64,000 nucleotides of DNA from IMGVR_UViG_3300048924_000191:124001-188000, one strand, 5' to 3'; positions 11,051 through 57,966 are shown, counted from the first letter of the stretch. Translations and numbers: made by a program. Notes: generated by a model from the sequence alone, not told the origin.

Positions 11051-11332
11051 TTAACGATGACGGTTTGTTTCAGTGTGGATCATGTCCACTAGCAATACAC
11101 CACAGGCTGTAGGTCCAACCAGCCAGGACGATCCAAGATCAAACAACACTACAAAGCCCGCGTAGACAGCAGCAAAAGCACTGATGCTGGTGGCGTGGAA
11201 GATGTACTGGTGCGATATCTCAGCGGTTCGACCCTTCCTGAATCTACCCAGTCGACGATAGGCTACGAGCAACACCAACAGTGCGCCTAACGTAGCCGAG
11301 AGATCAATGTACCAAAATACATCACGAGTCAT
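11051..11332 (-). CDS. Small membrane protein (about 3 TM segments)
   Basis: Three hydrophobic stretches with a basic loop RRLGRFRKGR; AAGGAC SD; own promoter and terminator. Confidence 0.7.
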   Translation of the reverse strand: MTRDVFWYIDLSATLGALLVLLVAYRRLGRFRKGRTAEISHQYIFHATSISAFAAVYAGFVVLFDLGSSWLVGPTACGVLLVDMIHTETNRHR

Positions 11333-11365
11333 GGCTTAGTCCTTGTCAAGTTTCATGACAAGTGA

Positions 11366-11388
11366 GTAATGTGTCATTATTTTTCTTT
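11366..11388 (-). promoter_or_regulatory. Putative early promoter AAAGA-N8-GACACATTAC
   Basis: Motif copy about 35 nt upstream of 11332. Confidence 0.55.
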
Positions 11389-13026
11389 ATCTTGCATAGC
11401 GACAATGGCCAGCCACTGCACGTAACGACCACCGCTATGCCCACGGCGACCACCGTCGCCTCCGTCGGTCGGATCAGGATACTTGTCCTGTCCTGGCGAC
11501 TCACCCCCACCTCCAGGCTTAATGCCCCCGCCCGGCCCTTCTGGCCAACCAATACCCCGATCAAGCAGATACCGATAGAACCACCGAATGTACGGATACG
11601 GCAACGAGTCGTCATCCAACAGCAACGTCTGAGCGTATTCGACATCCAGTTCAGGGACGATCGATTGGAACACCTGAAGAGTAGCTGCCCAATGTCCGGC
11701 CATCTGGTCAATAGCCTTTGGCGTGAACGCAGCGTACTGCACTGGGAAAGACAACCGAACGTGATACGTGTGTCGCAAGTCCAGAGGTTTTACCGAACGC
11801 ACCTGCAACTGTTCGTTGATCTCAATCGCGTCCTCACCCATGGGGATGTTGTTCTGATAGAGCGTGATGAGACACGACCCACCAGACCGACGATTGAGGG
11901 TCTTGTGAACGGACACGAAGTAGTCGTCCATTTCTTTGGTCAGCGTGATCGCCGGAAGTTCCCGCAACTTGATGATGTCTTGCGGATCTTTCGGATTGAG
12001 CAATACCAACCAACTGACCGCTGGGATGGTTTTCGGTGGTACGTTGCGATACCCGGGAATCCACTCATCCCAATACGGGAACCTCAATCCATCAGTAGGA
12101 GGAGGGAGGGAGTCCACATGTCCATCCAACACATCCAGTGCTCTCACACCGATGGGTCCATTCTTACGGACTTCTTCGACGCTGAAGTTCTGGTGTTTAT
12201 CGTACCACTTCTTCCCGATGTGGGATTGGTGCACAACCAATGGATAGGCGATGTAGAAATGACGCGGGCGTTTGTAGACGGCCTTGTAGCTGAACTCCAC
12301 CGTCCACGAGGTATCGCCTTCTACCTTTTGCTCCTCAGGGATCTCATCGAACTCGAACCATCCTTGAGCCTGCACCTGACCTTCATCGATAGCAAGCGTC
12401 AGCTTGTTCACGTCGTGGTCGACGGCACCCAGCGGTACGAGCTCGCGTAAGGCGATTTCACGCACGTACTCTTCAAAGGTCTGTCCATATCCGGCAATCT
12501 TCTCACGCAGCGTGTAAAGATGCAGGAGGAGCTCCCAGACACCATCTTGGAACGGGATCTGGTAACGGACCTGATGTTGGATCGATTCCCGGTTCTCGCC
12601 ACGGTCGGAAGAGAGTGAGTCTTTCCAATCCACCGCCTGTTGTCGGCTGGAGGCTGTGTACTTGAACTCAAACGTGATTTCCGAGGTGACGTAGTTGGGG
12701 CGCAGACTGAATCCAATCCGACGGTCTTCAAGGAACGGCGGCTCCTCGTTGGTGCGGATGTTTTCATTCAGCGTCTTCTCGTGCTTGATTCGTTCGATAG
12801 CCCTGACACGCAAACGTTGGTCGCTTTCGAACGTAGCCGAGTCTGTACCAGCAGCGTTTACCAGAGGTGAGTCTGGCTGGTTGACCTGATCGAACTCGTT
12901 AGTCACATAGACCGGAACAGTGTCAGGAATACGCATCAACTTCATCACGTCGCGAGCGATAGACAACGCAACGGGACGTGAGATGTTTTCATACGTGACG
13001 GGGAGAGGTACTTTGATTCTTGGCAT
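11377..13026 (-). CDS. Virion structural protein, phiKZ gp98-like
   Basis: MPRIKVPLP start with GAGG SD; YPLVVHQ and PYWDEW motifs; Gly-rich C-terminal segment; synteny. Confidence 0.6.
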   Translation of the reverse strand: MPRIKVPLPVTYENISRPVALSIARDVMKLMRIPDTVPVYVTNEFDQVNQPDSPLVNAAGTDSATFESDQRLRVRAIERIKHEKTLNENIRTNEEPPFLEDRRIGFSLRPNYVTSEITFEFKYTASSRQQAVDWKDSLSSDRGENRESIQHQVRYQIPFQDGVWELLLHLYTLREKIAGYGQTFEEYVREIALRELVPLGAVDHDVNKLTLAIDEGQVQAQGWFEFDEIPEEQKVEGDTSWTVEFSYKAVYKRPRHFYIAYPLVVHQSHIGKKWYDKHQNFSVEEVRKNGPIGVRALDVLDGHVDSLPPPTDGLRFPYWDEWIPGYRNVPPKTIPAVSWLVLLNPKDPQDIIKLRELPAITLTKEMDDYFVSVHKTLNRRSGGSCLITLYQNNIPMGEDAIEINEQLQVRSVKPLDLRHTYHVRLSFPVQYAAFTPKAIDQMAGHWAATLQVFQSIVPELDVEYAQTLLLDDDSLPYPYIRWFYRYLLDRGIGWPEGPGGGIKPGGGGESPGQDKYPDPTDGGDGGRRGHSGGRYVQWLAIVAMQDKEK

Positions 13027-44500: not shown

Positions 44501-46081
44501 TTACCAGTCACGCTGCGAACGGGTGCGGCGATCACTGCGACGGTCGTCGCTGCGGTCGTCTCGATCTCGGGTCCGATCATCGCGTGCGCTGCGCATGTCG
44601 GAGGACAAGCTGATCTTCGGCGAGTCCGTGTGGGTAGGCATTGCATCCAGACGACGGGCGGACAGTTCTGCTGCCAGGCCGACGATACCTTTGGCCAAGG
44701 AGTCGAATGCCTTGTTGTCGGTTTCCAGCGTAGGCGCAACTGCGCCGGACATGCATGCCGGGAACTCGAAGTAGGCTTCTTCGCCATGGTCGATACGAAT
44801 CCAGATCTTGATCAACCGGTCCAGGTTCGCATCGATACGGGCAGTCACTTGGAATCGACCACCGCAGGTCGCTTCGCGCAACAGGATGTTGCTGCAAGCG
44901 CTCTCGAAATAAGGCCAGCTGCCTTGAGTCGAGATACCGTCTACGAATGGCCAGACCTTGGAGATCTCGACTTCGTTCTGACCGCTACGGACAGTACTGT
45001 CGAGAACCAAGTGCTCTACCTCGTTGTACATCGACTGAATCATCAGGTTCGGCAACGACTGAGCGATGATGCGAGCCGCTACAGTTTCGTTGTCGGTACC
45101 GTTCCAGCCCGCCTGGTTTGCCAGACTGATACCGCGACCACCACGCCCAGTGCGGCCAAAGATGATCTTGTCCCAGTCGTAGTCTGGGTTCATCCGCTGA
45201 AGCTGACCGAAGGTGATGTAGCCGTCATCCAGGATGCGGTACTGTTCCTTCATCTGTTCGATCCACGGATCGAGTTCCAGATCGTTCTCCTCGACACGAT
45301 CATGGGCATGGTTCAGCGTATCGTGCTGACCCTCGTCGTAGTGGTGTGCTTGCTCAGGATCGGCTGCAGAAGCCATGTACGCCGACAGAGTCCGCGACAG
45401 ATACATCGAGGTGCTGTTGTTATCCAGCGTCGATGCTTTCAGCTGACTGGTAAACGCACCACACATGTTGGTAACGTTCTCATCACCGCTGAAGTGCTTG
45501 GCAAACTGCGTAGCGCCAGTACGACGACGGAAGATATCCGTCGGACGCAGACTGACTGGCCGATCCCGCAGACCGATGTTGTCGCGATCGTAACCGGTCA
45601 ACGAAGCACGGTTGAGGATCTGGTCATGCGCCTGGATCTTCGGTACCCACACGTTACGGTCGCGGTGACGCGACTCGTTCATGTGAACGCGAGTCACCTT
45701 GTCGAAGTACAGCTTCATCTTCTTGTCGAAGACGATCTTCGAATCGGTACCGGCATGCATGTCCTCGTCAGTGGTGCCGACGATGTAGTGGTACGTCTTG
45801 CTGTGGTTACGGTTGTTGACCGCAATCACCATGGCGAAAGCCAAGCGGTCGGCATCCCAACCGTTCGCAACGTGAGATTTGATCCGCCGCTCACGGGCGG
45901 TGTTCGGTACGAACAGACCGGCTGCGGTTTTGGCCAGACGGAACGGTGACACGTTGGTGCCTTCGTTGGTCGCTTTGGCGAACTCGTCGACCATGTGCTT
46001 ACGCAGGTCCAACGCATGCGGGGTGATCGGAATATCCAACTGTGGGGCCAGTTGGGTAAAGACCAGTTTAATAAGTTCCAC
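44501..46081 (-). CDS. picA: Phage-nucleus protein importer PicA/Imp1 (phiKZ gp69-like)
   Basis: Position between gp68-like and gp70-like genes; ANGW...RLAF, YIVGTTD, LRPTDIF motifs. Confidence 0.75.
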   Translation of the reverse strand: MELIKLVFTQLAPQLDIPITPHALDLRKHMVDEFAKATNEGTNVSPFRLAKTAAGLFVPNTARERRIKSHVANGWDADRLAFAMVIAVNNRNHSKTYHYIVGTTDEDMHAGTDSKIVFDKKMKLYFDKVTRVHMNESRHRDRNVWVPKIQAHDQILNRASLTGYDRDNIGLRDRPVSLRPTDIFRRRTGATQFAKHFSGDENVTNMCGAFTSQLKASTLDNNSTSMYLSRTLSAYMASAADPEQAHHYDEGQHDTLNHAHDRVEENDLELDPWIEQMKEQYRILDDGYITFGQLQRMNPDYDWDKIIFGRTGRGGRGISLANQAGWNGTDNETVAARIIAQSLPNLMIQSMYNEVEHLVLDSTVRSGQNEVEISKVWPFVDGISTQGSWPYFESACSNILLREATCGGRFQVTARIDANLDRLIKIWIRIDHGEEAYFEFPACMSGAVAPTLETDNKAFDSLAKGIVGLAAELSARRLDAMPTHTDSPKISLSSDMRSARDDRTRDRDDRSDDRRSDRRTRSQRDW

Positions 46082-46111: not shown

Positions 46112-47776
46112 TTAGCGGCTGAAATCGTTGAGCTTGATCAGCAACTGCGCGCACTGGTCGCGGAAGTCGGGCGAGACTTCAATTCGTTTGGTCTTGTCGC
46201 TGCGATAGTAGCTCGCAGCCAGTTCTTTGCAGCACCGTGGTTCCCACTCGTTCTTGATGAACTCGTTGGCCACCATGTCGATGCCGCGGACGGCCGTGTT
46301 GACAGCCAGGGTTACGTCAGAGCCTTTGCTATCGGTGTAGTCGTACGGACTGATGGCTTGAAGCGTTTGGATGTTGGCGTTACTGACGGGCAATCGAGTA
46401 ACTCCCATCAACATCTCGCCATCGGCCAATTCGATCTTCTTGGCAGTCAGCAGAATCGCCAACTGCGGAAGACCCCACTCCCACAGTACCGCCTGAGCGA
46501 TACCCATGGAAACCAGAAGCGGTTCTTTACGGTCGTAGACTTCAACGATACAACCAGCAATAACGGTTGACATGATCCAGATGCAAAGGGTCGTCTGGGC
46601 TTCTGTCGGGATGAATCGGTCGATAGCCATGGTGCTACTGACGCACATCTCGATCCGTTCTTTGCTGAGGTTCGGTTCGATCGTCTGCGCGGCATTGATG
46701 TACCGCATGACGTACTTCTGACTGATCATGAGATCGCCAGCCGAAACCTGCTCTTTCATTTTGTACACGCAGAGCACCGAGCTGTTATCATCCAGCGCAG
46801 TTTCTGCGTCCACCTTCGGTTTGATGTTGCTGCCGAAGACGGAAGGTTTACGGTTGTTGTTGGAGCAGCAGTAGTTGAAGATAATCTTCATCATGTGCTG
46901 TTTGTCATGCTCCGGCGACAGTGGGGCTACTGCCGCTTTCCGGATCAGGCCTTGCGCCATCAGGTATTCAGGCACTTCATCGCTGGACAGGTGTTTGAAC
47001 GACACCGCGAGTTCGTACTCTTCTTCCTTCAGGTTTGCCGCAAGATACGTCTCCAACCGTGCGAAGACCGAGAGGTTCGGTTCTTCATCATCCAACACAT
47101 CGCCAAACCAACGAGAGTCTGGGGAGATTATCCCTTGTGCTCGATAGATAGACGACTTGGCCAGGAGCTTATAAGCATTGAGCTCCTTCATGGAGATCCG
47201 ATCTTCCTTACCAGAGATTGGCAGGTATCGGCCCCAGACCGGGATCATCAGACGCAGGCCGAGTGCAACGGCCACGAGATCGATGTACTCGTTACGCAGA
47301 TAGGTCCGCTGCATGTAGCGCGGCGTAACCTTGTCGGCTGTGGCGTAACTGTCCATTAAGTCAGCTGGAATCTTGAACTTGCGGCTGAACACCACAAACT
47401 CTCGCAGATCCTCGAACTTGACAATCTCGTAAATCCTGGCGACTTGCTCAGACAGCAACTCCGCCAGAAGTTTCGAACTGCTGACGCCTTCAGCTGACAT
47501 TTCGGTTGTCCCGAACTGGCTGAAGATTTCATCGATTCGATAATAAATTTCGTACATCGTGTCCTGCTGATCTTTAGTCAACTTCTGCAGGAACTCGTTG
47601 ATCTCCTCGAACAGTTCTACGCGGACACCGGTTTCAGAAGTATCGTCTTCCTTCATTGCACCGGGTTTTGCGGTAGAATAACCTTTGGCTGAGAATGTCA
47701 GCTCTTCTTCTGTCCCATGTCGAATCGACACGAGAGAAAAACTGCTCTTCGTAAAACCCGTGATGACAAGTTCCAT
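46112..47776 (-). CDS. nvRNAP promoter-specificity (sigma-like) subunit, phiKZ gp68-like
   Basis: LFEEINEFL, RTYLRNEYIDL, MIPVWGRY; GGAG SD at ATG 47776; synteny. Confidence 0.78.
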   Translation of the reverse strand: MELVITGFTKSSFSLVSIRHGTEEELTFSAKGYSTAKPGAMKEDDTSETGVRVELFEEINEFLQKLTKDQQDTMYEIYYRIDEIFSQFGTTEMSAEGVSSSKLLAELLSEQVARIYEIVKFEDLREFVVFSRKFKIPADLMDSYATADKVTPRYMQRTYLRNEYIDLVAVALGLRLMIPVWGRYLPISGKEDRISMKELNAYKLLAKSSIYRAQGIISPDSRWFGDVLDDEEPNLSVFARLETYLAANLKEEEYELAVSFKHLSSDEVPEYLMAQGLIRKAAVAPLSPEHDKQHMMKIIFNYCCSNNNRKPSVFGSNIKPKVDAETALDDNSSVLCVYKMKEQVSAGDLMISQKYVMRYINAAQTIEPNLSKERIEMCVSSTMAIDRFIPTEAQTTLCIWIMSTVIAGCIVEVYDRKEPLLVSMGIAQAVLWEWGLPQLAILLTAKKIELADGEMLMGVTRLPVSNANIQTLQAISPYDYTDSKGSDVTLAVNTAVRGIDMVANEFIKNEWEPRCCKELAASYYRSDKTKRIEVSPDFRDQCAQLLIKLNDFSR

Positions 47777-47832: not shown

Positions 47833-47930
47833 GGACATTATATATGGCGGCACAGTAAGTTTTAACCGTGAGCGGCATACAGGACTGTCCTCTACATGCC
47901 CATGGACATGTAGAGGATCGAGGTAACCTA

Positions 47931-48746
47931 TCAGTAAGGCAGGTCTTCGTCGAACGAATCGAAGCTATCGTGACCAGGTGCCGCTGGAGCTTGAGCTTGA
48001 GATTGTCCTTGCCCTTGCTGCTGGTATTGCTGTTGACCGCCTCCACCACCTCCGCCACCATTGTTGCGGTTCTGGTACTGGCCGCCACCACCGCCACCAC
48101 CGCCGTTATTGCGCTGAGCGCGTTCGGCTTGTTGCTTGAGGCGCCATTCCTTCTTGTATTCCGGTTCTTTCCAGTCGCGCTCGACTTTATTGACCAGAAT
48201 GGTTTTCCACATCTCGGCCCAGGCCAGTGCCGCTTCGGACGAACTGATGTCGACAGACACCGGCTGGCCGTTTTGGGTAATAGCCATGTAGTCGTTCTGC
48301 TTGAAGTCGAAGCGCATTTCTGGCTTGTTGCGAGCAGTCACCGACAGGGAAACCTGACCATCTGCACGCTTCTCGATGAGCATGCGGCCGACGTGCAGCT
48401 TTTCCTTGGACTTGACGTTCTTGCCCTGACCGCGATCGTAGACCCACGGGTGACCGTAGATATCGGTTTCAAACGCCAGACCACCGCCTTGATGGCTGGC
48501 TACCCGACGGATCAAGTTCAGAACGGTGAGCATGTTGGCGAGCATGATCGGCATCTCGACATCGACTTTGTAGCCTTTGTCGGTCTTGGTGCCGGAGTCG
48601 ACGGTCAGGATCGGGCCGTTTTCGTCGAAGGAGAACTTGCCGCGAATTGGGAAACCGTCGGGCCGGATAGGCGGACCCCAAAGCATCAAAGCCTTGTCGT
48701 CGGTTACGTCATAGTCGCGGGGCGGTTTGCGTGGAGCTTGGCTCAT
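47931..48746 (-). CDS. chmC: Nucleus-associated nucleic-acid-binding protein ChmC (phiKZ gp67-like)
   Basis: Immediately upstream of gp68-like and picA; G/Q/N-rich disordered tail ending FDEDLPY. Confidence 0.68.
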   Translation of the reverse strand: MSQAPRKPPRDYDVTDDKALMLWGPPIRPDGFPIRGKFSFDENGPILTVDSGTKTDKGYKVDVEMPIMLANMLTVLNLIRRVASHQGGGLAFETDIYGHPWVYDRGQGKNVKSKEKLHVGRMLIEKRADGQVSLSVTARNKPEMRFDFKQNDYMAITQNGQPVSVDISSSEAALAWAEMWKTILVNKVERDWKEPEYKKEWRLKQQAERAQRNNGGGGGGGGQYQNRNNGGGGGGGGQQQYQQQGQGQSQAQAPAAPGHDSFDSFDEDLPY

Positions 48747-48803: not shown

Positions 48804-49661
48804 TTACTTGCGGTACAAGTCTTTGACCAACACTTCCAACGCAGGGTCGCGGTTCTGCTCGATCGAGTAGATCACAAAGTCCTTCGTGGTTGCTGGAGTC
48901 CAGGCGTTCTTCGTAGCCACCTTGTACACTCGCTGACGGATCTTTACCGCCATCGGAACAAAGAGCACGTTATCGCCAAAGATCTGCAACGACATTCTGT
49001 CAAACGGGATGATTTCCAAATCCCGTCCTTCATGCAGCTTGGTGTTCCACATCATAGGCGGCTTTATAGCGCCTGTGTGGGACTCTAGGAGCACGAGCGA
49101 CTTGAACTTATACCGTTGCAGCAGGTCGATCGGATAATGCGTCAGAATCGCTGTATCGGCGTCTATGTTAGGGAAGTCCGTGGTGTACTTCTCAACAGGC
49201 GCCTGATCCTTCATCTCACCCAAGATGTATTTGATCACCGACATCTCCGAAGCGGCGTTCTGCTTCTGGAGGATGGTGTTCGCCGTCTTGGGGATCGACT
49301 TGGTGAACTTACGCAGGAAGTCGTCGTACGAGCAGTAGTAGAACATCGTTTGGCACACACCGTCTGACTCTTCGGTGATGATACCTTCGATAGTCCGCAT
49401 CTCTGCAATCAACGATTCCGCTACGTTGTACTCGTCGACCTTCGCTCGCTGGTCTTTATCCATCGACCCGAAGATGTTTCGGATCAGAGTGCGGATATTG
49501 ACCATCAGCAAATCCCGGCGACGAATCTCCGGGTCAGCAGTAGGAGCTTCTGGGAGCTTACCGATGAAAGACTCGATGGCCTGACTTGTAGCGATGGAGA
49601 TGGGAAAGTTCCCCATCGTCCGTTGCGACAGTGCGTCTCTGGATATAGAGTCGACTGACAT
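48804..49661 (-). CDS. Conserved core protein (phiKZ gp66-like)
   Basis: FPISIATSQA, NIRTLIRN, LLESHTG, QIFGD; synteny. Confidence 0.6.
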   Translation of the reverse strand: MSVDSISRDALSQRTMGNFPISIATSQAIESFIGKLPEAPTADPEIRRRDLLMVNIRTLIRNIFGSMDKDQRAKVDEYNVAESLIAEMRTIEGIITEESDGVCQTMFYYCSYDDFLRKFTKSIPKTANTILQKQNAASEMSVIKYILGEMKDQAPVEKYTTDFPNIDADTAILTHYPIDLLQRYKFKSLVLLESHTGAIKPPMMWNTKLHEGRDLEIIPFDRMSLQIFGDNVLFVPMAVKIRQRVYKVATKNAWTPATTKDFVIYSIEQNRDPALEVLVKDLYRK

Positions 49662-49670
49662 GGTAGCTCC

Positions 49671-50849
49671 TTAACTGTTTAGCTCTTGCTCAGCGAACTT
49701 CAGCGCCTCAGGGCTCAGATTACTCAACCTTGGTACCACCAGCCCCGACAACGTGTCAGAACGGATGGAGGTCAGGATAGGACGTTCTACGGGAGACTCG
49801 TAGGCGCCGGTAATCTTCTTAGCCTCAACGGTGTCGTGGGTGAGTTTGAAATGAGGGAAGCGGGTCTTCAAGCGGGAGAAGTTGGAATAGGTCTCATCCG
49901 AACGACTAAGCCGTAGACGATAGTTACTGCCGTCAGGACTGTCCTCCAGAGAAGACAACAGCTTCTCAACCTCAGGATACGACTTCCCGACTACGTCTAA
50001 CGTCGTGAAGATGACCGCGCGGTGGTTAACAATGAACTGCTCGTCGTGAACGCCTTTCTCTGGCGAGAAGGAGAACTGGAGGTGACCTTTGGCTTCCTCC
50101 TGCCGGTGTTTATGCCGGTCTGGCGATCCTGGGATACGAATGATCCCTAAGACCTTGTGCGTATGGTCGTGGCCGTTAACGATCAGGTGGCGGACAATGC
50201 CTTGATACCTGTCCTCATCATGACTCGAAACTGTCTCTACCGGCGCTTGGAACCGGAAGAAACCGTGCATGAATCCGAAGTCAACCTTATCCAGCGCTCT
50301 GTCTCGCATCAGGGCTTGGACTTCAAGCCAAGTACGGTTCGCGTCGTGGTTGACCTCATCCGGCACCCAAAGGACCATCGGCCCGCCGGGAAACAGTTCG
50401 TCAATCGAAAGTTCCGGGTAGTACCGCAGATCCACACCAAGGCAAGTCATCTCGTTGTACGTGACCATCCACTGCGATTGCCGCTGGTCATGACTCGGAG
50501 TGCCTTCCAGGATACGGATAGCGACGTTGTACTGTTTACAAGCTCGCAGGAGACGTTCCATCCACCGACTGATCAGATACGCTTCGGTACTGTCGTGCGG
50601 CAGACGTTGGTCAAACAGATCCCCTGTGATGATGATGAAGTCGATGAGTTTCAGACGGTCAGGGTTGAGAAACAACTCCAGGTCTTCAATCATCTTGCGG
50701 GTCGGAACCCGACCGTGTCCTAAATGGACGTCACTCAGGATAACAACGTGAAACGTGCCGGGGGCAGGAGTAGGATTGATGTAATCTACCCACTCCACCT
50801 GCCGGACTGGATTAGTATTCGAAAGCGCCTGGTTCATCGTCATCGTCAT
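49671..50849 (-). CDS. SbcD/Mre11-like metallophosphoesterase nuclease (start uncertain)
   Basis: SDVHLGH, GDLFD, GTPSHD, MHG, NGHDH, PGS. Confidence 0.88.
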   Translation of the reverse strand: MTMTMNQALSNTNPVRQVEWVDYINPTPAPGTFHVVILSDVHLGHGRVPTRKMIEDLELFLNPDRLKLIDFIIITGDLFDQRLPHDSTEAYLISRWMERLLRACKQYNVAIRILEGTPSHDQRQSQWMVTYNEMTCLGVDLRYYPELSIDELFPGGPMVLWVPDEVNHDANRTWLEVQALMRDRALDKVDFGFMHGFFRFQAPVETVSSHDEDRYQGIVRHLIVNGHDHTHKVLGIIRIPGSPDRHKHRQEEAKGHLQFSFSPEKGVHDEQFIVNHRAVIFTTLDVVGKSYPEVEKLLSSLEDSPDGSNYRLRLSRSDETYSNFSRLKTRFPHFKLTHDTVEAKKITGAYESPVERPILTSIRSDTLSGLVVPRLSNLSPEALKFAEQELNS

Positions 50850-51507
50850 TGCCGTTATCGGTAGTGGACTGTTTTACCACCCCCGATTCTGCTTCGAGCA
50901 ACGGGGCCAGCTGGGCAGCGCCTTCTTCCCCGAGGATTTCTACCAAGGGGAGTTTGTAGTAGTGGTACATCCTGACCAATTGGGTCAGGGCATGGGCCAT
51001 GCTGTGTTCAGCTGGTTTTGCCATGTTGTCCTGGACGAGGCTTTCCTCGATACCCCAGAATTCCCGTAGGTTGGTGTTGTCCGCATACACGCCTTGCAGG
51101 TTGATGGCGTGAAGCATCGACTTCTTACGGGCGGCCTTGTGGTCGGTGGTGTTCAACTGGATATCGACGAACGCTGGAGGTACGACGAACAGGATGTTGT
51201 CGTTAGCATCCACAACGTTGATCGGGTTGTGCAGGCCGTCGGCTACGTTGAGCCAATGACCAATTTCTGGAGCAGGATCGGCTTTAGTGACCCATGCTCG
51301 CACAACATGTAGCAAATGTTTAGCAAAGTACGGTTCAGGTACACGGCGGATACGCGCTGCCGTCATGCGGTTGATTTCGTCCGCAGCGCTGTCAAGGGAA
51401 GACAGGCTTTCCTGAAGATACCGCTGGTAGGCGGTAGGAGCCATCGGCTTTACGTTCTTTGGCGGAACGAAAGGGTTCTCGCCCATTGCCACATCTTTGC
51501 GAATCAT
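50812..51507 (-). CDS. Conserved hypothetical protein
   Basis: VPEPYF..WLNVA..LFVVPP. Confidence 0.6.
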   Translation of the reverse strand: MIRKDVAMGENPFVPPKNVKPMAPTAYQRYLQESLSSLDSAADEINRMTAARIRRVPEPYFAKHLLHVVRAWVTKADPAPEIGHWLNVADGLHNPINVVDANDNILFVVPPAFVDIQLNTTDHKAARKKSMLHAINLQGVYADNTNLREFWGIEESLVQDNMAKPAEHSMAHALTQLVRMYHYYKLPLVEILGEEGAAQLAPLLEAESGVVKQSTTDNGNDDDDEPGAFEY

Positions 51508-55914: not shown

Positions 55915-57966
55915 TTAACGACGATCCCAGTCATCGCTGAAGAAGCGACCACCACGACCTTCGCGATCACGATCGCGGTCACGACCACGACGACGGCTCA
56001 CGCCGCCTTCGGAGATTGCCTGCGACGAGAACAGACGGTTACCCACCGAACGACGACCCGACAGGGTGTCGCCACCGGCGATGTACGGGCTCATGCGGGA
56101 CTTGTCCAGGGCGGACGCGAGAGCCGGCAGCAGGTTCTTCTGGAAGACCAGCTGTTCGGCAGTCTGTACGACATGGATGTCCGGCACGAACTTGCGCAGG
56201 ATGTGGTAACGCTCGGACAGGTTGTAGTCGACGGTGTGGCGGCTGTCTTCGAAGGTGAACTGGTAGTCGCGAACGAGCTCCAGATCTTTCGAACCAGCAC
56301 GGGTCAGCACAGCCGGTACGTTCCACTCGCTCAGCGGACGCAGAGTCGAGGTGTCCGGGTCGGTCCAGGTACCGATCAGAACGCGAGTACCCGCGGATTC
56401 AACAGGCAGAGGCATGCTGCCGCCGTTCATTTCGCGGTATTCTTCGCGGAAGCGGTCGTCGGTCAAAACGTCCCAGGCATCGTACAGCTTGGTGCACAGG
56501 GCGTCGACTTTCGACTTGCTTTCCTCGGTGGCGATCTTCTCGAAGATCGACAGGATTGCGGCGTTCTGGCCGGAACTGGCGGTGACCATACCGAACGACA
56601 CGTCGCGCTTGAAGAACGCGTCGATGAAGTCGGCGAAGTCGTCGTCGTTCATGTTGCTGGTGACCAGGTCCATTGCGTCGCGACGCTGATCATCTTCCAG
56701 ATCCGCCAGCAGGGCGATATCCTTCAGATCGAACACCGGCTTGACTTTGCCACCGACGGTCTTGCGAGGACGCGCCATGTTGGTCCAGCGGTAGTCGTTC
56801 GACAGCAGAGCCACGGAGCCCAGCGCCAGACCTACCAGACCCAGGCTGTTCGGGTAACCGTCGACCGGGGCGATGGAGTTGATGTTGATAACGCCCTGCA
56901 TGAAGGCGGTTTCGTCATCTTCGTCGCGGCGGCGGGTACGCTTACGGCTCAGGCGGTTGCGGTCACGATCGTTGTCGTCGTCCTGGATGAACATATCCAG
57001 AGAGCAACGGGCTTCGACCATCGGAGTACGCTCGTACAGATCGTCCTCGTCATCGTCGGTCCGTTCCGAGTAGTGCGAAGTTACCAACGCATCGGTACGG
57101 ATCGGCAGGCCGGAGGTGTCGTGGCCGAACGGCTGGTTGTAATCGATGGTGGCTTCCAGACGGTCGCCGCTGTCGATCAGTTCCGGACGCAGAGCGAACT
57201 CGCTGATTGCGTCTGGATTGCTGGCGTCCAGGATTTCCTGACGGTAACCGCACAGGGCATCGATGGCATTGTCGAAGATCTGAGCAACCACGCGGTTGTT
57301 TTCTTTCTCGGAGACTTCCGAGATCAGATCCGCCAGGATCACCTGCGAGTTGACCAGCACGACACGTTTGCAACCCAGGCCGGCCGCTTCTTCACGAATG
57401 CCTTTGGTGTAGGCGTCGTTCATGCGGTCTTCCGGCAGCACCAGCGCCTCGTAGTTGTCGCCACGAGATACCGCGTTGCGGGTGGTCTGGGAACCCGGCT
57501 GCTCGATGCAGAGGGTGTAGACCAGAGTTACGCCGCCCGGGATCAGTTTCGGCAGAGGCAGGCAGACCAGCAGGGACGGCAGAGCACGCGAGCCTTTACG
57601 GCCGGTATACGGCAGAACCTGGAAGCGCGACTGCTGGATGTCCGGGTGGATGTTTGGATTGTCGAAGGTCTTGGCAGCCTTGAAGGTATCCATCAGGATA
57701 GCCAGGGCAGCGTCAGAAACACCCGACATTTGCGGGCGGTTCATGGCACGACCGAGGGACGCCATGTTGAAGCCACGGCCTTCGTCTTCTTCTTCACCAC
57801 GACGCCCGCGCTTACCGCCACGGTCGCTGCGGTCACGGTCGCGGCCACCACGATCTTCATCACGGTCGCGGTCACGGTTTTCGGTGCGGTTCTCGCGGCC
57901 TTGATCGCCGGTCGACTTGTCGCCGCCGGTTGGTTCGTCGTCGAGTACCAGATCGTCATTGCTCAT
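55915..57966 (-). CDS. chmA: Chimallin (ChmA/PhuN), phage nuclear shell protein (phiKZ gp54-like)
   Basis: 683 aa, directly upstream of nvRNAP beta' N; strongly biased codons; AGGAG SD; SGLPIRTD, LKDIALL, LIGTWTD..LRPL motifs. Confidence 0.85.
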   Translation of the reverse strand: MSNDDLVLDDEPTGGDKSTGDQGRENRTENRDRDRDEDRGGRDRDRSDRGGKRGRRGEEEDEGRGFNMASLGRAMNRPQMSGVSDAALAILMDTFKAAKTFDNPNIHPDIQQSRFQVLPYTGRKGSRALPSLLVCLPLPKLIPGGVTLVYTLCIEQPGSQTTRNAVSRGDNYEALVLPEDRMNDAYTKGIREEAAGLGCKRVVLVNSQVILADLISEVSEKENNRVVAQIFDNAIDALCGYRQEILDASNPDAISEFALRPELIDSGDRLEATIDYNQPFGHDTSGLPIRTDALVTSHYSERTDDDEDDLYERTPMVEARCSLDMFIQDDDNDRDRNRLSRKRTRRRDEDDETAFMQGVININSIAPVDGYPNSLGLVGLALGSVALLSNDYRWTNMARPRKTVGGKVKPVFDLKDIALLADLEDDQRRDAMDLVTSNMNDDDFADFIDAFFKRDVSFGMVTASSGQNAAILSIFEKIATEESKSKVDALCTKLYDAWDVLTDDRFREEYREMNGGSMPLPVESAGTRVLIGTWTDPDTSTLRPLSEWNVPAVLTRAGSKDLELVRDYQFTFEDSRHTVDYNLSERYHILRKFVPDIHVVQTAEQLVFQKNLLPALASALDKSRMSPYIAGGDTLSGRRSVGNRLFSSQAISEGGVSRRRGRDRDRDREGRGGRFFSDDWDRR

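What the first reader, a model, noticed from the sequence alone, without database searches (positions are those of the whole stretch)
47931..48150. ChmC ends in a bacterial SSB-like linker and acidic tip (..DSFDEDLPY)
Seen: a G/Q/N-rich linker followed by APAAPGHDSFDSFDEDLPY. Established: bacterial SSBs end in a G/Q/P linker plus (D/S)FDDDIPF, which docks RecQ, PriA, ExoI, Ung, TopB and Pol III chi. Inference: ChmC may mimic the SSB tip to recruit or sequester host genome-maintenance enzymes, or act as a cargo adaptor for nuclear import alongside PicA.
Basis: partly seen in the sequence, partly recalled or inferred. Interest (0 to 1): 0.6.

Follow-up and report, generated by a model that had tools for sequence, protein, structure and literature searches.

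The report
SSB-like tail on phage ChmC
A jumbo-phage RNA-binding protein (ChmC) ends in a flexible linker and an acidic, aromatic-ended tip that closely copies the partner-docking tail of bacterial SSB; the tip is kept across the whole ChmC family, which points to an untested docking function.

Summary
Window 47931-48746 (-) encodes a 271-aa ChmC/Imp6 ortholog of a divergent nucleus-forming phage. It matches PHROG 3284, has a Whirly fold and keeps the gp65-gp66-ChmC-gp68-PicA gene order. Residues 215-271 are predicted disordered: a G/Q/N linker followed by HDSFDSFDEDLPY.

The last 27 residues align end-to-end with the last 27 of E. coli SSB (41% identity, E 3e-6).

The tip is conserved in the family. 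In 67 distinct ChmCs the last residue is F, W or Y in 58, and the consensus of 14 diverse members ends FDDDIPF. Proteus phage 10 ChmC ends DFDDDIPF, exactly like SSB. The linker between core and tip is conserved only in composition.

The published ChmC paper describes the tail as N/G-rich plus S/D/E-rich and needed for condensates. Neither it nor any other paper I found links the tail to SSB.

No canonical SSB family was detected in six chimallivirus genomes.

The tip register drifts between lineages (IPF, PxF, VMAF), whereas SSB tips are invariant (74 of 80 species). I therefore favour a docking and autoregulatory tail aimed mainly at phage partners, with host mimicry as a secondary possibility. 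No binding partner was shown; the one complex prediction gave no answer.

The parts
47931..48746 (-). chmC (Imp6) ortholog, 271 aa, stop TGA at 47931-47933
   Evidence: ORF and translation. PHROG 3284 at E 7e-29, the same PHROG that PhiKZ gp67, PhiPA3 gp61 and SA002 ChmC hit. Eight close relatives at 36-63% identity.
48105..48746 (-). Folded part, residues 1-214: Whirly/PUR-type core (about residues 10-193) plus a C-terminal helix (196-213)
   Evidence: AF2 model, pLDDT mostly 73-92. The VIA-align top 12 chains are all Whirly/PUR/MRP proteins (WHY2 Z 9.1, StWhy2 8.4, MRP1/2 7.8, PURA 7.0); the next unrelated rows are at Z 4.5 or less. Net charge +5.
47973..48104 (-). Disordered G/Q/N-rich linker, residues 215-258, ending in QAQAPAAPG
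   Evidence: pLDDT below 50. Composition G19 Q12 A4 N3 of 44, against E. coli SSB linker G17 Q11 P8 A6 of 56. Across the family the sequence is not conserved (0.3-0.7 bits per position) and tail length ranges 21-63 residues.
47934..47972 (-). Acidic, aromatic-ended tip HDSFDSFDEDLPY, residues 259-271, net charge -5
   Evidence: Aligns with E. coli SSB ...NEPPMDFDDDIPF. Family conservation is 3.2 bits at the last residue and 1.7-2.4 bits at positions -3 to -7. D266 is one of only 6 invariant columns in the 14-sequence alignment, whose consensus ends FDDDIPF.
44501..46081 (-). PicA/Imp1 (PhiKZ gp69) ortholog, 526 aa, two genes downstream of chmC
   Evidence: PHROG 3141 at E 2e-47, the same PHROG as Eowyn 'ORF069'. 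Syntenic in 7 metagenome loci and 4 phage records. PhiKZ gp69 binds gp67 directly (bioRxiv 10.1101/2024.03.27.586873).
46112..47773 (-). PhiKZ gp68-like protein, 553 aa, between chmC and picA; gp68 is published as a non-virion RNA polymerase component
   Evidence: PHROG 3209 at E 8e-85, the same as Eowyn 'ORF068'. gp68 is stated to be part of the nvRNAP complex in bioRxiv 10.1101/2024.03.27.586873.
48804..49661 (-). PhiKZ gp66-like protein, 285 aa, directly upstream of chmC
   Evidence: PHROG 3229 at E 2e-76.
49671..50849 (-). SbcD-like nuclease subunit (PhiKZ gp65 position), 392 aa
   Evidence: PHROG 100 at E 1e-40. Annotated as SbcCD subunit D in PhiPA3, DT01 and RP12.
47888..47917 (-). 15+15 nt hairpin, 14 nt downstream of the chmC stop
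   Evidence: Inverted repeat, 93% complementary. A hairpin of different sequence lies at the same position in L015, L016 and L017.

Best explanation
The protein is a ChmC/Imp6 ortholog: a Whirly-fold binder of single-stranded nucleic acid from a nucleus-forming jumbo phage. Its last 57 residues form an SSB-type tail, a flexible G/Q/N linker ending in an acidic tip with a terminal aromatic residue and a free carboxylate.

Proposed mechanism:
- The tetramer, shown experimentally for PhiPA3 ChmC, presents four tails.
- Without nucleic acid, the -5 tip folds back on the basic nucleic-acid-binding face of the core, as the tails of E. coli SSB and T7 gp2.5 do. Together with the linker this sets condensate formation.
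- When RNA or ssDNA occupies that face, the tips are released. They dock into basic-rimmed hydrophobic pockets on partner proteins and tether those partners to ChmC-coated nucleic acid.
- The partners are most likely phage proteins of the nucleus or its shell. [quoted passage not shown] In lineages whose tip reads IPF or LPY, cross-binding of host SSB partners is possible.

Shown here: ChmC identity, the fold, the disordered tail, the similarity to SSB, and family-wide conservation of the tip. Taken from the literature: the tetramer, RNA and ssDNA binding, tail-dependent condensates, PicA binding and Rhc co-purification. Inferred: fold-back, docking and the identity of the partners.
For: Identity as ChmC:
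- PHROG 3284 match.
- Whirly fold at Z 9.1.
- Conserved gene order in 11 loci.

Tail and its likeness to SSB:
- Residues 215-271 have pLDDT below 50.
- Linker composition matches the E. coli SSB linker.
- The 27-residue end-to-end alignment with E. coli SSB has E 3e-6.

Conservation of the tip:
- 58 of 67 ChmCs end in F, W or Y.
- 59 of 67 have an acidic, aromatic tip without K or R, against 15 of 725 ORFs of 100 aa or more in this genome.
- Information content jumps from 0.3-0.7 bits in the linker to 1.7-3.2 bits in the last 8 residues.
- The 14-sequence consensus ends FDDDIPF and D266 is invariant.
- Proteus phage 10 ChmC ends DFDDDIPF, the ending of 74 of 80 gammaproteobacterial SSBs.
- A conserved Pro and aliphatic residue and a terminal aromatic go beyond a simple need for negative charge.

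Why a phage partner is favoured:
- The register differs between lineages (15 aliphatic-P-aromatic, 18 PxF, 9 PxFx(x), 18 without Pro), while the host motif is invariant.

Literature:
- The PhiPA3 tail deletion abolishes condensates but keeps the tetramer and RNA binding; ChmC binds ssRNA at 58 nM and ssDNA at 184 nM; the in vivo constructs described are GFP-ChmC, a name that suggests an N-terminal tag and a free tip (PMC11077065).
- PhiKZ gp67 binds Imp1/PicA (bioRxiv 10.1101/2024.03.27.586873).
- Goslar ChmC co-purifies with Rhc, whose N-terminal domain is RNase HI-like (PMC13648698).
- E. coli RNase HI is listed among SSB-Ct partners, and SSB-Ct pockets combine basic residues with a hydrophobic pocket for the terminal Phe and its carboxylate (PMC5872125).
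- E. coli SSB forms condensates that depend on its linker and tip (PMC7584906).

Other:
- An Rhc ortholog (491 aa, PF00075) is present in this genome.
- No PF00436, PF08804 or PF10991 SSB was found in this genome or in five reference chimalliviruses.
Against: - There are no binding data for any tip. The one complex prediction (PicA + Rhc RNase HI domain + tail) gave no answer and counts neither way.
- The authors of the ChmC paper read the S/D/E segment as a generic 'electronegative cluster', and a purely intramolecular role would fit their data.
- About a quarter of ChmCs lack the Pro, and some end in L, A, G or E, so any pocket must tolerate variation or co-evolve.
- The published Imp1-gp67 complex survives size exclusion at 2:1 stoichiometry. 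It was made with 'gp67-FLAG', possibly tagged at the C-terminus. That would mean PicA binding does not need a free tip.
- Similarity before the tip (APAAP) could reflect composition, although self-shuffles give p 3e-4.
Confidence: 0.5

Rival explanations
1. Host mimicry. The tip imitates the host SSB C-terminus to recruit host SSB-interacting enzymes (ExoI, RecQ, PriA, RNase HI, Topo III, Pol III chi and others) to phage nucleic acid or the nucleus, or to sequester them away from host SSB.
For: - The window tip DEDLPY keeps every chemical feature of DDDIPF, and 27 residues align with E. coli SSB.
- Proteus phage 10 ChmC ends in the exact 8-mer DFDDDIPF, shared by 74 of 80 SSBs.
- SA002, pEa54, P0007, P0008, P0057 and P0058 end in IPF or LPF.
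- SSB-Ct pockets read mainly the terminal aromatic, its carboxylate and the acidic residues (PMC5872125).
- PhiKZ imports at least one host enzyme, TopA (bioRxiv 10.1101/2024.03.27.586873).
Against: - Only 15 of 67 ChmCs keep the SSB register.
- Pseudomonas phages alone show MPSF, IPNF, VMAF, VPL and SFDW, whereas SSB tips hardly vary.
- ChmC acts inside and on the phage nucleus (PMC11077065), and the nucleus excludes host nucleases (PMC11077065 abstract).
- The host of this phage is unknown, so no match to its SSB could be tested.
Confidence: 0.15
2. Intramolecular role only. The acidic tip is an electronegative cluster that shields the basic RNA-binding surface, keeps ChmC soluble, sharpens RNA specificity and tunes condensates. 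It has no partner protein, and the resemblance to SSB is convergence on the same autoinhibitory chemistry.
For: - Core net charge +5, tip -5.
- The ChmC paper proposes this reading, and its tail deletion abolishes condensates (PMC11077065).
- In T7 gp2.5 the acidic tail and ssDNA compete for one surface, and Enc34 ORF6 loses ssDNA selectivity without its tail (PMC5686142 and its reference 14).
- SSB condensation depends on interactions between its globular and disordered regions (PMC11947617 abstract).
Against: - A charge-only role does not explain conservation of the aliphatic-Pro-aromatic end and the near-invariant terminal F/W/Y.
- In every well-studied SSB-type tail the autoinhibitory peptide is also the partner-docking peptide.
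- ChmC has known protein contacts: PicA directly, and Rhc by co-purification.
Confidence: 0.25
3. No function. The tip is a chance or neutral ending of a low-complexity tail.
For: Low-complexity tails evolve fast and can produce short motifs by chance. Linker length and sequence are highly variable.
Against: - The tip is retained in 59 of 67 orthologs whose cores share about 20% identity.
- D266 is invariant, like only five other columns.
- This is the only ORF of 1651 in the genome with the strict motif.
Confidence: 0.03

Closest known systems
ChmC / Imp6 of PhiPA3 (gp61), PhiKZ (gp67) and Goslar (gp176)
   Same: Same PHROG (3284), same Whirly-type fold and same gene neighbourhood (SbcD-like, gp66, ChmC, gp68, PicA). 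Same tail plan: a G/N-rich disordered region followed by an S/D/E-rich end. The tips are related: PhiKZ FDEDMPSF, PhiPA3 FDDEIPNF, the Goslar-like SA002 FDESIPF.
   Different: Only about 20-23% identity to these in the core. The linker is richer in Q and poorer in N. The tip has the exact SSB register (aliphatic-Pro-aromatic at the very end) and a terminal Tyr. The pre-tip segment QAPAAP matches E. coli SSB better than that of any other ChmC sampled.
Bacterial SSB C-terminal tail (disordered linker plus SSB-Ct tip DFDDDIPF)
   Same: Both are tetrameric single-strand binders with a G/Q-rich disordered linker of about 45-55 residues, then an A/P-rich spacer, then an acidic tip ending aliphatic-Pro-aromatic-COOH. 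There is a 27-residue end-to-end alignment with E. coli SSB. Both proteins form tail-dependent condensates (PMC11077065, PMC7584906).
   Different: The core is a Whirly fold, not an OB fold: no PF00436 match and a structural match to Whirly proteins. The PhiPA3 ortholog prefers RNA over ssDNA (PMC11077065). The tip varies between ChmC lineages but is nearly invariant in SSB. No partner of the tip is known.
Acidic C-terminal tails of phage SSBs (T7 gp2.5, T4 gp32, Enc34 ORF6)
   Same: A phage-encoded single-strand binder with a disordered acidic tail. In T7 gp2.5 the tail both competes with ssDNA for the binding cleft and contacts the phage polymerase and helicase (PMC5686142).
   Different: Those proteins have OB folds. 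Their families (PF08804, PF10991) are absent from this genome. Their tails lack the long G/Q/N linker.
Whirly / PUR / MRP single-strand binders (plant WHY1/2, T. brucei MRP1/2, PUR-alpha)
   Same: The fold of residues 10-193 (Z 6-9.1).
   Different: There is no detectable sequence similarity. I know of no member of those families with an SSB-Ct-like tip; this comes from memory and was not tested.

Membership tests
ChmC / Imp6 (PHROG 3284) | Sequence-profile match shared with the characterised members | tested here: met
   P0001 matches phrog_3284 at E 7e-29 over residues 1-254. PhiKZ gp67, PhiPA3 gp61 and SA002 ChmC hit the same profile at E 1e-63 to 6e-81.
ChmC / Imp6 (PHROG 3284) | N-terminal Whirly/PUR-type fold | tested here: met
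   AF2 model. The top 12 structural matches are all Whirly/PUR/MRP proteins at Z 6.0-9.1, well above unrelated rows at Z 4.5 or less. Foldseek alone was weak (best E 0.026).
ChmC / Imp6 (PHROG 3284) | Disordered C-terminal N/G-rich region followed by an S/D/E-rich segment (PMC11077065) | tested here: met
   Residues 215-271 have pLDDT below 50. The linker is G/Q/N-rich and the tip is HDSFDSFDEDLPY.
ChmC / Imp6 (PHROG 3284) | Conserved position next to gp66, gp68 and PicA in a chimallin-encoding genome | tested here: met
   The neighbours hit PHROGs 100, 3229, 3209 and 3141, as in Eowyn. The order is the same in 7 metagenome loci. Chimallin (PF25677) is recorded upstream in L016-L019. In the window's own genome the chimallin match is weak (E 3.4e-5, 18.6 bits, below the 27-bit cut-off) but lies in a 686-aa frame.
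ChmC / Imp6 (PHROG 3284) | Homotetramer; binds ssRNA more tightly than ssDNA; binds phage mRNAs; binds PicA | not testable with these tools
   Known only for PhiPA3, Goslar and PhiKZ proteins (PMC11077065; bioRxiv 10.1101/2024.03.27.586873).
Bacterial SSB (PF00436) | OB-fold ssDNA-binding domain | tested here: not met
   No Pfam SSB match in the protein or anywhere in the genome. The fold is Whirly. The protein is therefore not a member of the SSB family; only the tail resembles it.
Bacterial SSB (PF00436) | Gly/Gln/Pro-rich intrinsically disordered linker | tested here: met
   The composition is close to the E. coli SSB linker and the region is predicted disordered.
Bacterial SSB (PF00436) | C-terminal tip D-F-D-D-D-I-P-F with a free terminal aromatic residue | tested here: met
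   The tip is S-F-D-E-D-L-P-Y. All changes are conservative and the alignment ends at the C-terminus of both proteins. The reference set of 80 SSBs ends DFDDDIPF in 74 cases.
Bacterial SSB (PF00436) | Tip docks SSB-interacting proteins | not testable with these tools
   The single complex prediction gave no answer. Peptide binding assays are needed.
Phage SSBs of T4 gp32 and T7 gp2.5/Enc34 type | Family profile match (PF08804, PF10991) | tested here: not met
   No match in the genome at E up to 1. For these phage-specific families the control genomes gave no match above the cut-off either, so this negative is weak.

The most novel reading that the evidence does not exclude
ChmC is the missing SSB of nucleus-forming phages. 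On this reading it is a Whirly-fold tetramer that carries a genuine SSB-type linker and tip, possibly captured from a proteobacterial ssb gene given the 27-residue match that includes the non-functional APAAP spacer. It would coat not only mRNA but also ssDNA at forks and R-loops inside the phage nucleus. Through its tip it would recruit the Rhc RNase HI/DNA polymerase complex, or imported host SSB partners.
Probability: 0.2. Interest if true: 0.8.

Novelty: new variant of a known kind. Interest (0 to 1): 0.6.

Why it matters
ChmC is essential for nucleus-forming phages. It sits at the junction of transcription, mRNA export, protein import (PicA) and replication (Rhc), but how it contacts these machines is unknown.

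A conserved 8-10 residue docking motif gives a precise handle. Tip peptides, tip deletions and tip swaps can be tested in the existing Goslar and PhiKZ knockdown-complementation systems.

The finding also raises two testable questions:
- What serves as the SSB in the chimallivirus replisome? No canonical SSB family was found in six genomes.
- Is the SSB-style design (oligomeric single-strand binder, disordered linker, acidic aromatic tip, condensates) a general solution that has arisen on a non-OB fold, or a tail captured from a host gene?

Tried and rejected
- **Megablast and full-length tblastn against phage records:** no match. Only the N-terminal domain at a relaxed E-value found weak chimallivirus hits.
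- **IMG/VR scan with the family alignment:** returned a single, near-identical contig.
- **Tail against PDB sequences:** only low-complexity hits such as RAD51 linkers and MHC fusions; no SSB chain.
- **Foldseek against PDB:** weak on its own (E 0.026). The re-alignment was needed to show the Whirly fold.
- **A recollection of mine was wrong.** I remembered phage Enc34 ORF6 as a Whirly-fold SSB. It is an OB-fold, T7 gp2.5-like protein (PMC5686142), so I dropped the idea of a known class of Whirly-type phage SSBs.
- **Complex prediction:** PicA ortholog + Rhc RNase HI domain + ChmC tail 232-271 gave 'no answer' (ipSAE 0.00 in both runs; controls not run). This is not evidence for or against binding.
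- **The genome search centred on an E. coli locus:** I used the search for related loci instead to collect SSB tails.
- **Not used:** the large representative-protein search, since the word search and family scans settled the family. No alternative genetic code was used.
- **Co-variation between the ChmC ending and the ending of the protein at the PhiKZ gp64 position:** both end in Y in the window and both end in PL in DT01. Eleven loci are too few to draw a conclusion.

Full report
**1. What is in the sequence**

The minus-strand ORF at window 47931-48746 encodes 271 residues. It ends ...QRNNGGGGGGGGQYQNRNNGGGGGGGGQQQYQQQGQGQSQAQAPAAPGHDSFDSFDEDLPY, followed by TGA.

The window is bases 124001-188000 of a 243,378-bp IMG/VR virus record with direct terminal repeats and 54% G+C.

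**2. Identity of the protein**

- Pfam gives nothing except a weak glycine-rich hit.
- PHROGs places the protein in phrog_3284 at E 7e-29. PhiKZ gp67, PhiPA3 gp61 and the Goslar-like SA002 protein hit the same profile. These are the published ChmC (PMC11077065), also named Imp6 (bioRxiv 10.1101/2024.03.27.586873).
- The neighbours match the PhiKZ gp65-gp69 block. In order they are an SbcD-like nuclease (49671-50849), a gp66-like protein (48804-49661), ChmC, a gp68-like protein (46112-47773) and the PicA/Imp1 ortholog (44501-46081).
- The same order holds in four phage records and seven metagenome loci.
- Chimallin (PF25677) lies upstream in the relatives. In the window's own genome it gives a weak hit in a 686-aa frame.
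- An AlphaFold2 model built on eight relatives is confident for residues about 10-214 and has pLDDT below 50 for 215-271.
- The twelve best structural matches are all Whirly/PUR/MRP proteins: WHY2 at Z 9.1 with rmsd 3.0 Å over 115 residues, StWhy2 at 8.4, MRP1/2 at 7.8 and PURA at 7.0. The next, unrelated chains are at Z 4.5 or below.
- BFVD matches are chimallivirus proteins, including one from phage EL.

The protein is therefore a divergent ChmC ortholog, about 20-23% identical to the characterised ones.

**3. Is the tail SSB-like?**

I read E. coli SSB from NC_000913.3. Its tail is a G/Q/P-rich linker ending ...QSAPAAPSNEPPMDFDDDIPF.

- BLASTP of ChmC residues 200-271 against the whole of SSB returns one ungapped 27-residue alignment that ends on the last residue of both proteins. 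It has 41% identity, 63% positives and E 3e-6 for that single comparison.
- Shuffling the 8-residue tip gives p about 1e-3. Shuffling the 19 residues before it, which carry the shared APAAP, gives p about 3e-4.
- Linker composition is alike: G19 Q12 of 44 residues in ChmC, against G17 Q11 P8 of 56 in SSB.
- In the whole phage genome this is the only one of 1651 ORFs ending [DE]3-[ILVM]-P-[FYW].
- As a reference set, 74 of 80 gammaproteobacterial SSB genes (Enterobacterales, Vibrio, Aeromonas) end in exactly DFDDDIPF. [quoted passage not shown]

**4. Is the tip conserved in ChmC?**

Eight close relatives (36-63% identity) end FDEDVLF, FDEELAF, FDEDVMF, FDDDVFF, FDEDIPF, FDEEIPF and FDGDIPF.

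ChmCs read from phage records:

| Phage | C-terminal ending |
|---|---|
| PhiKZ | FDEDMPSF |
| PhiPA3 | FDDEIPNF |
| SA002 | FDESIPF |
| Proteus phage 10 | DFDDDIPF (the exact SSB 8-mer) |
| DT01 | FDDDVPL |
| RP12 | SDDIPW |
| RSL2 | FDDISF |
| pEa_SNUABM_54 | FDTDIPF |
| Eowyn | YDDDVWG |
| 201phi2-1 | ELASFDW |

- An alignment of 14 diverse members has the consensus ending FDDDIPF. D266 is one of only six invariant columns.
- A profile word search added 51 more proteins.
- Over 67 distinct full-length sequences the last residue is F in 53, W in 4, Y in 1 and L in 4.
- Information relative to tail composition is 3.2 bits at the last position and 1.7-2.4 bits at positions -3 to -7. It is only 0.3-0.7 bits at positions -13 to -30.
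- 59 of 67 have an acidic, aromatic tip free of K and R, against 15 of 725 ORFs of 100 aa or more in the genome.

The tip is thus a conserved short linear motif at the end of a linker that is conserved only in composition and varies in length from 21 to 63 residues.

The register is not uniform. Fifteen sequences end aliphatic-Pro-aromatic as SSB does. Eighteen end Pro-x-Phe, nine end Pro-x-Phe-x(x), eighteen lack the Pro (VMAF, AMEAF, LAF) and seven are other acidic, W- or F-containing endings. The window protein has the highest 27-residue score to E. coli SSB of all sampled ChmCs.

**5. What is already published**

The ChmC paper states four things (PMC11077065):
- The C-terminal 50-70 residues are disordered.
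- A subregion of about 40 residues is N/G-rich and is followed by about 15 residues that are S/D/E-rich.
- The authors liken the S/D/E segment to 'electronegative clusters'.
- Deleting residues 204-251 of PhiPA3 ChmC abolishes condensates while keeping the tetramer and RNA binding.

The words 'SSB' and 'acidic' do not occur in that paper. No paper in the library holds both 'Chimalliviridae' and 'SSB'. The 2025 and 2026 reviews and the Rhc preprint do not mention SSB either.

The tail is therefore known. Its reading as an SSB-type tip appears to be new, as do the family-wide conservation of the terminal aromatic and Pro and the exact SSB 8-mer in some phages.

**6. Mechanism**

I favour a tethered docking and autoregulatory tail. 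The core has net charge +5 and the tip -5. In SSB, T7 gp2.5 and related proteins the same acidic, aromatic-ended peptide does two jobs: it occupies the nucleic-acid site and it docks partner proteins (PMC5686142, PMC5872125). E. coli SSB also forms condensates that depend on its linker and tip (PMC7584906).

ChmC shares each architectural element, and its tail deletion has the matching phenotype.

Candidate partners:
- **PicA/Imp1.** It binds PhiKZ ChmC directly at 1:2 stoichiometry (bioRxiv 10.1101/2024.03.27.586873).
[quoted passage not shown] E. coli RNase HI is a listed SSB-Ct partner (PMC5872125). An Rhc ortholog is present in this genome.

I favour phage partners for two reasons. The tip register drifts between phage lineages, even within Pseudomonas phages, while bacterial SSB tips do not vary. 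ChmC also works inside and on the phage nucleus.

Host mimicry remains possible where the tip reads IPF or LPY, as it does in this window.

A further observation is that no PF00436, gp32 or gp2.5/Enc34-type SSB was detected in this genome or in PhiKZ, PhiPA3, 201phi2-1, SA002 and Eowyn. The last two families also gave no match above the cut-off in the control genomes, so those negatives are weak. PhiPA3 ChmC binds ssDNA at 184 nM (PMC11077065). This leaves open the possibility that ChmC also serves as the SSB of the phage nucleus.

**7. Limits**

- No interaction was demonstrated.
- The one complex prediction gave no answer and is not used as evidence.
- Whether the tail was captured from an ssb gene or arose by convergence cannot be decided from low-complexity sequence. 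The APAAP match is suggestive only.

**8. Verdict**

- The ChmC naming is confirmed.
- The tip is conserved.
- This is a new functional reading of a known tail on a known, essential phage protein, and it is directly testable with peptides and tip mutants.

Noticed in passing
window 50812-51507 (-); also L015:4305-4937, L016:4033-4710, L017:4250-4936, L019:4317-4964, L020:4186-4968, L003:1420-2040, L004:1220-1819, L005:1372-2031, L006:1336-1929: The gene just upstream of the SbcD-like gene (231 aa here, no PHROG or Pfam hit) also ends in an acidic tail with an aromatic or hydrophobic last residue. Here it reads ..NDDDDEPGAFEY. Elsewhere it reads ..SDEPDAYEF, ..SDDDLIY, ..DDDADAFEY, ..VDDDPLLF, ..FDDNGSFMY, ..ADDDIEPL, ..NGDIEEY and ..DEYDEL. 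This is a second protein of the same gene block with a similar ending, so it might share a docking site with ChmC.
   Followed up: partly
window 44501-46081 (-); L015:9639-11219 and 11262-12524; L016:9533-11092 and 11108-12376; L017:9642-11234 and 11270-12511: In the window's clade the PicA ortholog has an Arg/Asp/Ser-rich mixed-charge tail ending in W (here ..RDRDDRSDDRRSDRRTRSQRDW). In relatives L015-L017 the next protein (gp70 position) has one too; the window's own gp70-position gene was not examined. The tail is absent from PicA of L019-L021, SA002, DT01, Proteus phage 10 and Eowyn. It resembles RS/RD-type low-complexity tails.
   Followed up: partly
window 47888-47917; L015:7793-7822; L016:7837-7862; L017:7807-7836: A 15+15 nt hairpin lies just after the chmC stop, in the longest intergenic gap of the block. 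A hairpin occurs at the same place in relatives but with a different sequence. This suggests a terminator or an RNA-stability element. I saw no clear U-run.
   Followed up: partly
L012:1201-2613 (Erwinia phage pEa_SNUABM_54): This phage's ChmC is 470 aa, apparently two Whirly modules in tandem. It is followed by the same G/N/Q linker and a tip ending FDTDIPF.
   Followed up: no
L020 (NCBI GCA_044983125.1, contig of 241,126 bp): A ChmC homolog (P0060, a cluster of 145 member sequences) with the full gp65-gp70 block sits on a 241-kb contig of an assembly labelled Salmonella enterica. This looks like a chimallivirus genome co-assembled with isolates. Its tip is atypical (..DDDDPSIAFDGLAF).
   Followed up: no
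L056, L078, L095 and three other SSB loci: Six of 80 SSB genes carry the DFDDDIPF (or DFEDDIPF) motif internally, followed by about 15 extra residues (for example ..DFDDDIPFIGFGYDCSRVAIHAL). In these the motif is not at the C-terminus. They may be mobile-element paralogues.
   Followed up: no
window about 56512-57162 (-), inside a 686-aa open frame: This is the likely chimallin (ChmA) gene. The Pfam PF25677 match is only E 3.4e-5 and 18.6 bits, below the cut-off, although the syntenic proteins of relatives carry the family. The shell protein appears to be very divergent.
   Followed up: partly
P0002 (191 aa, from a 14-kb contig) and L002 (IMGVR_UViG_3300009092_000025): A near-identical phage from other samples yields a ChmC that is identical for about 178 residues and then runs into an unrelated 13-residue ending. 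This is probably a frameshift or an assembly error in the repetitive GGN-rich tail-coding DNA.
   Followed up: no
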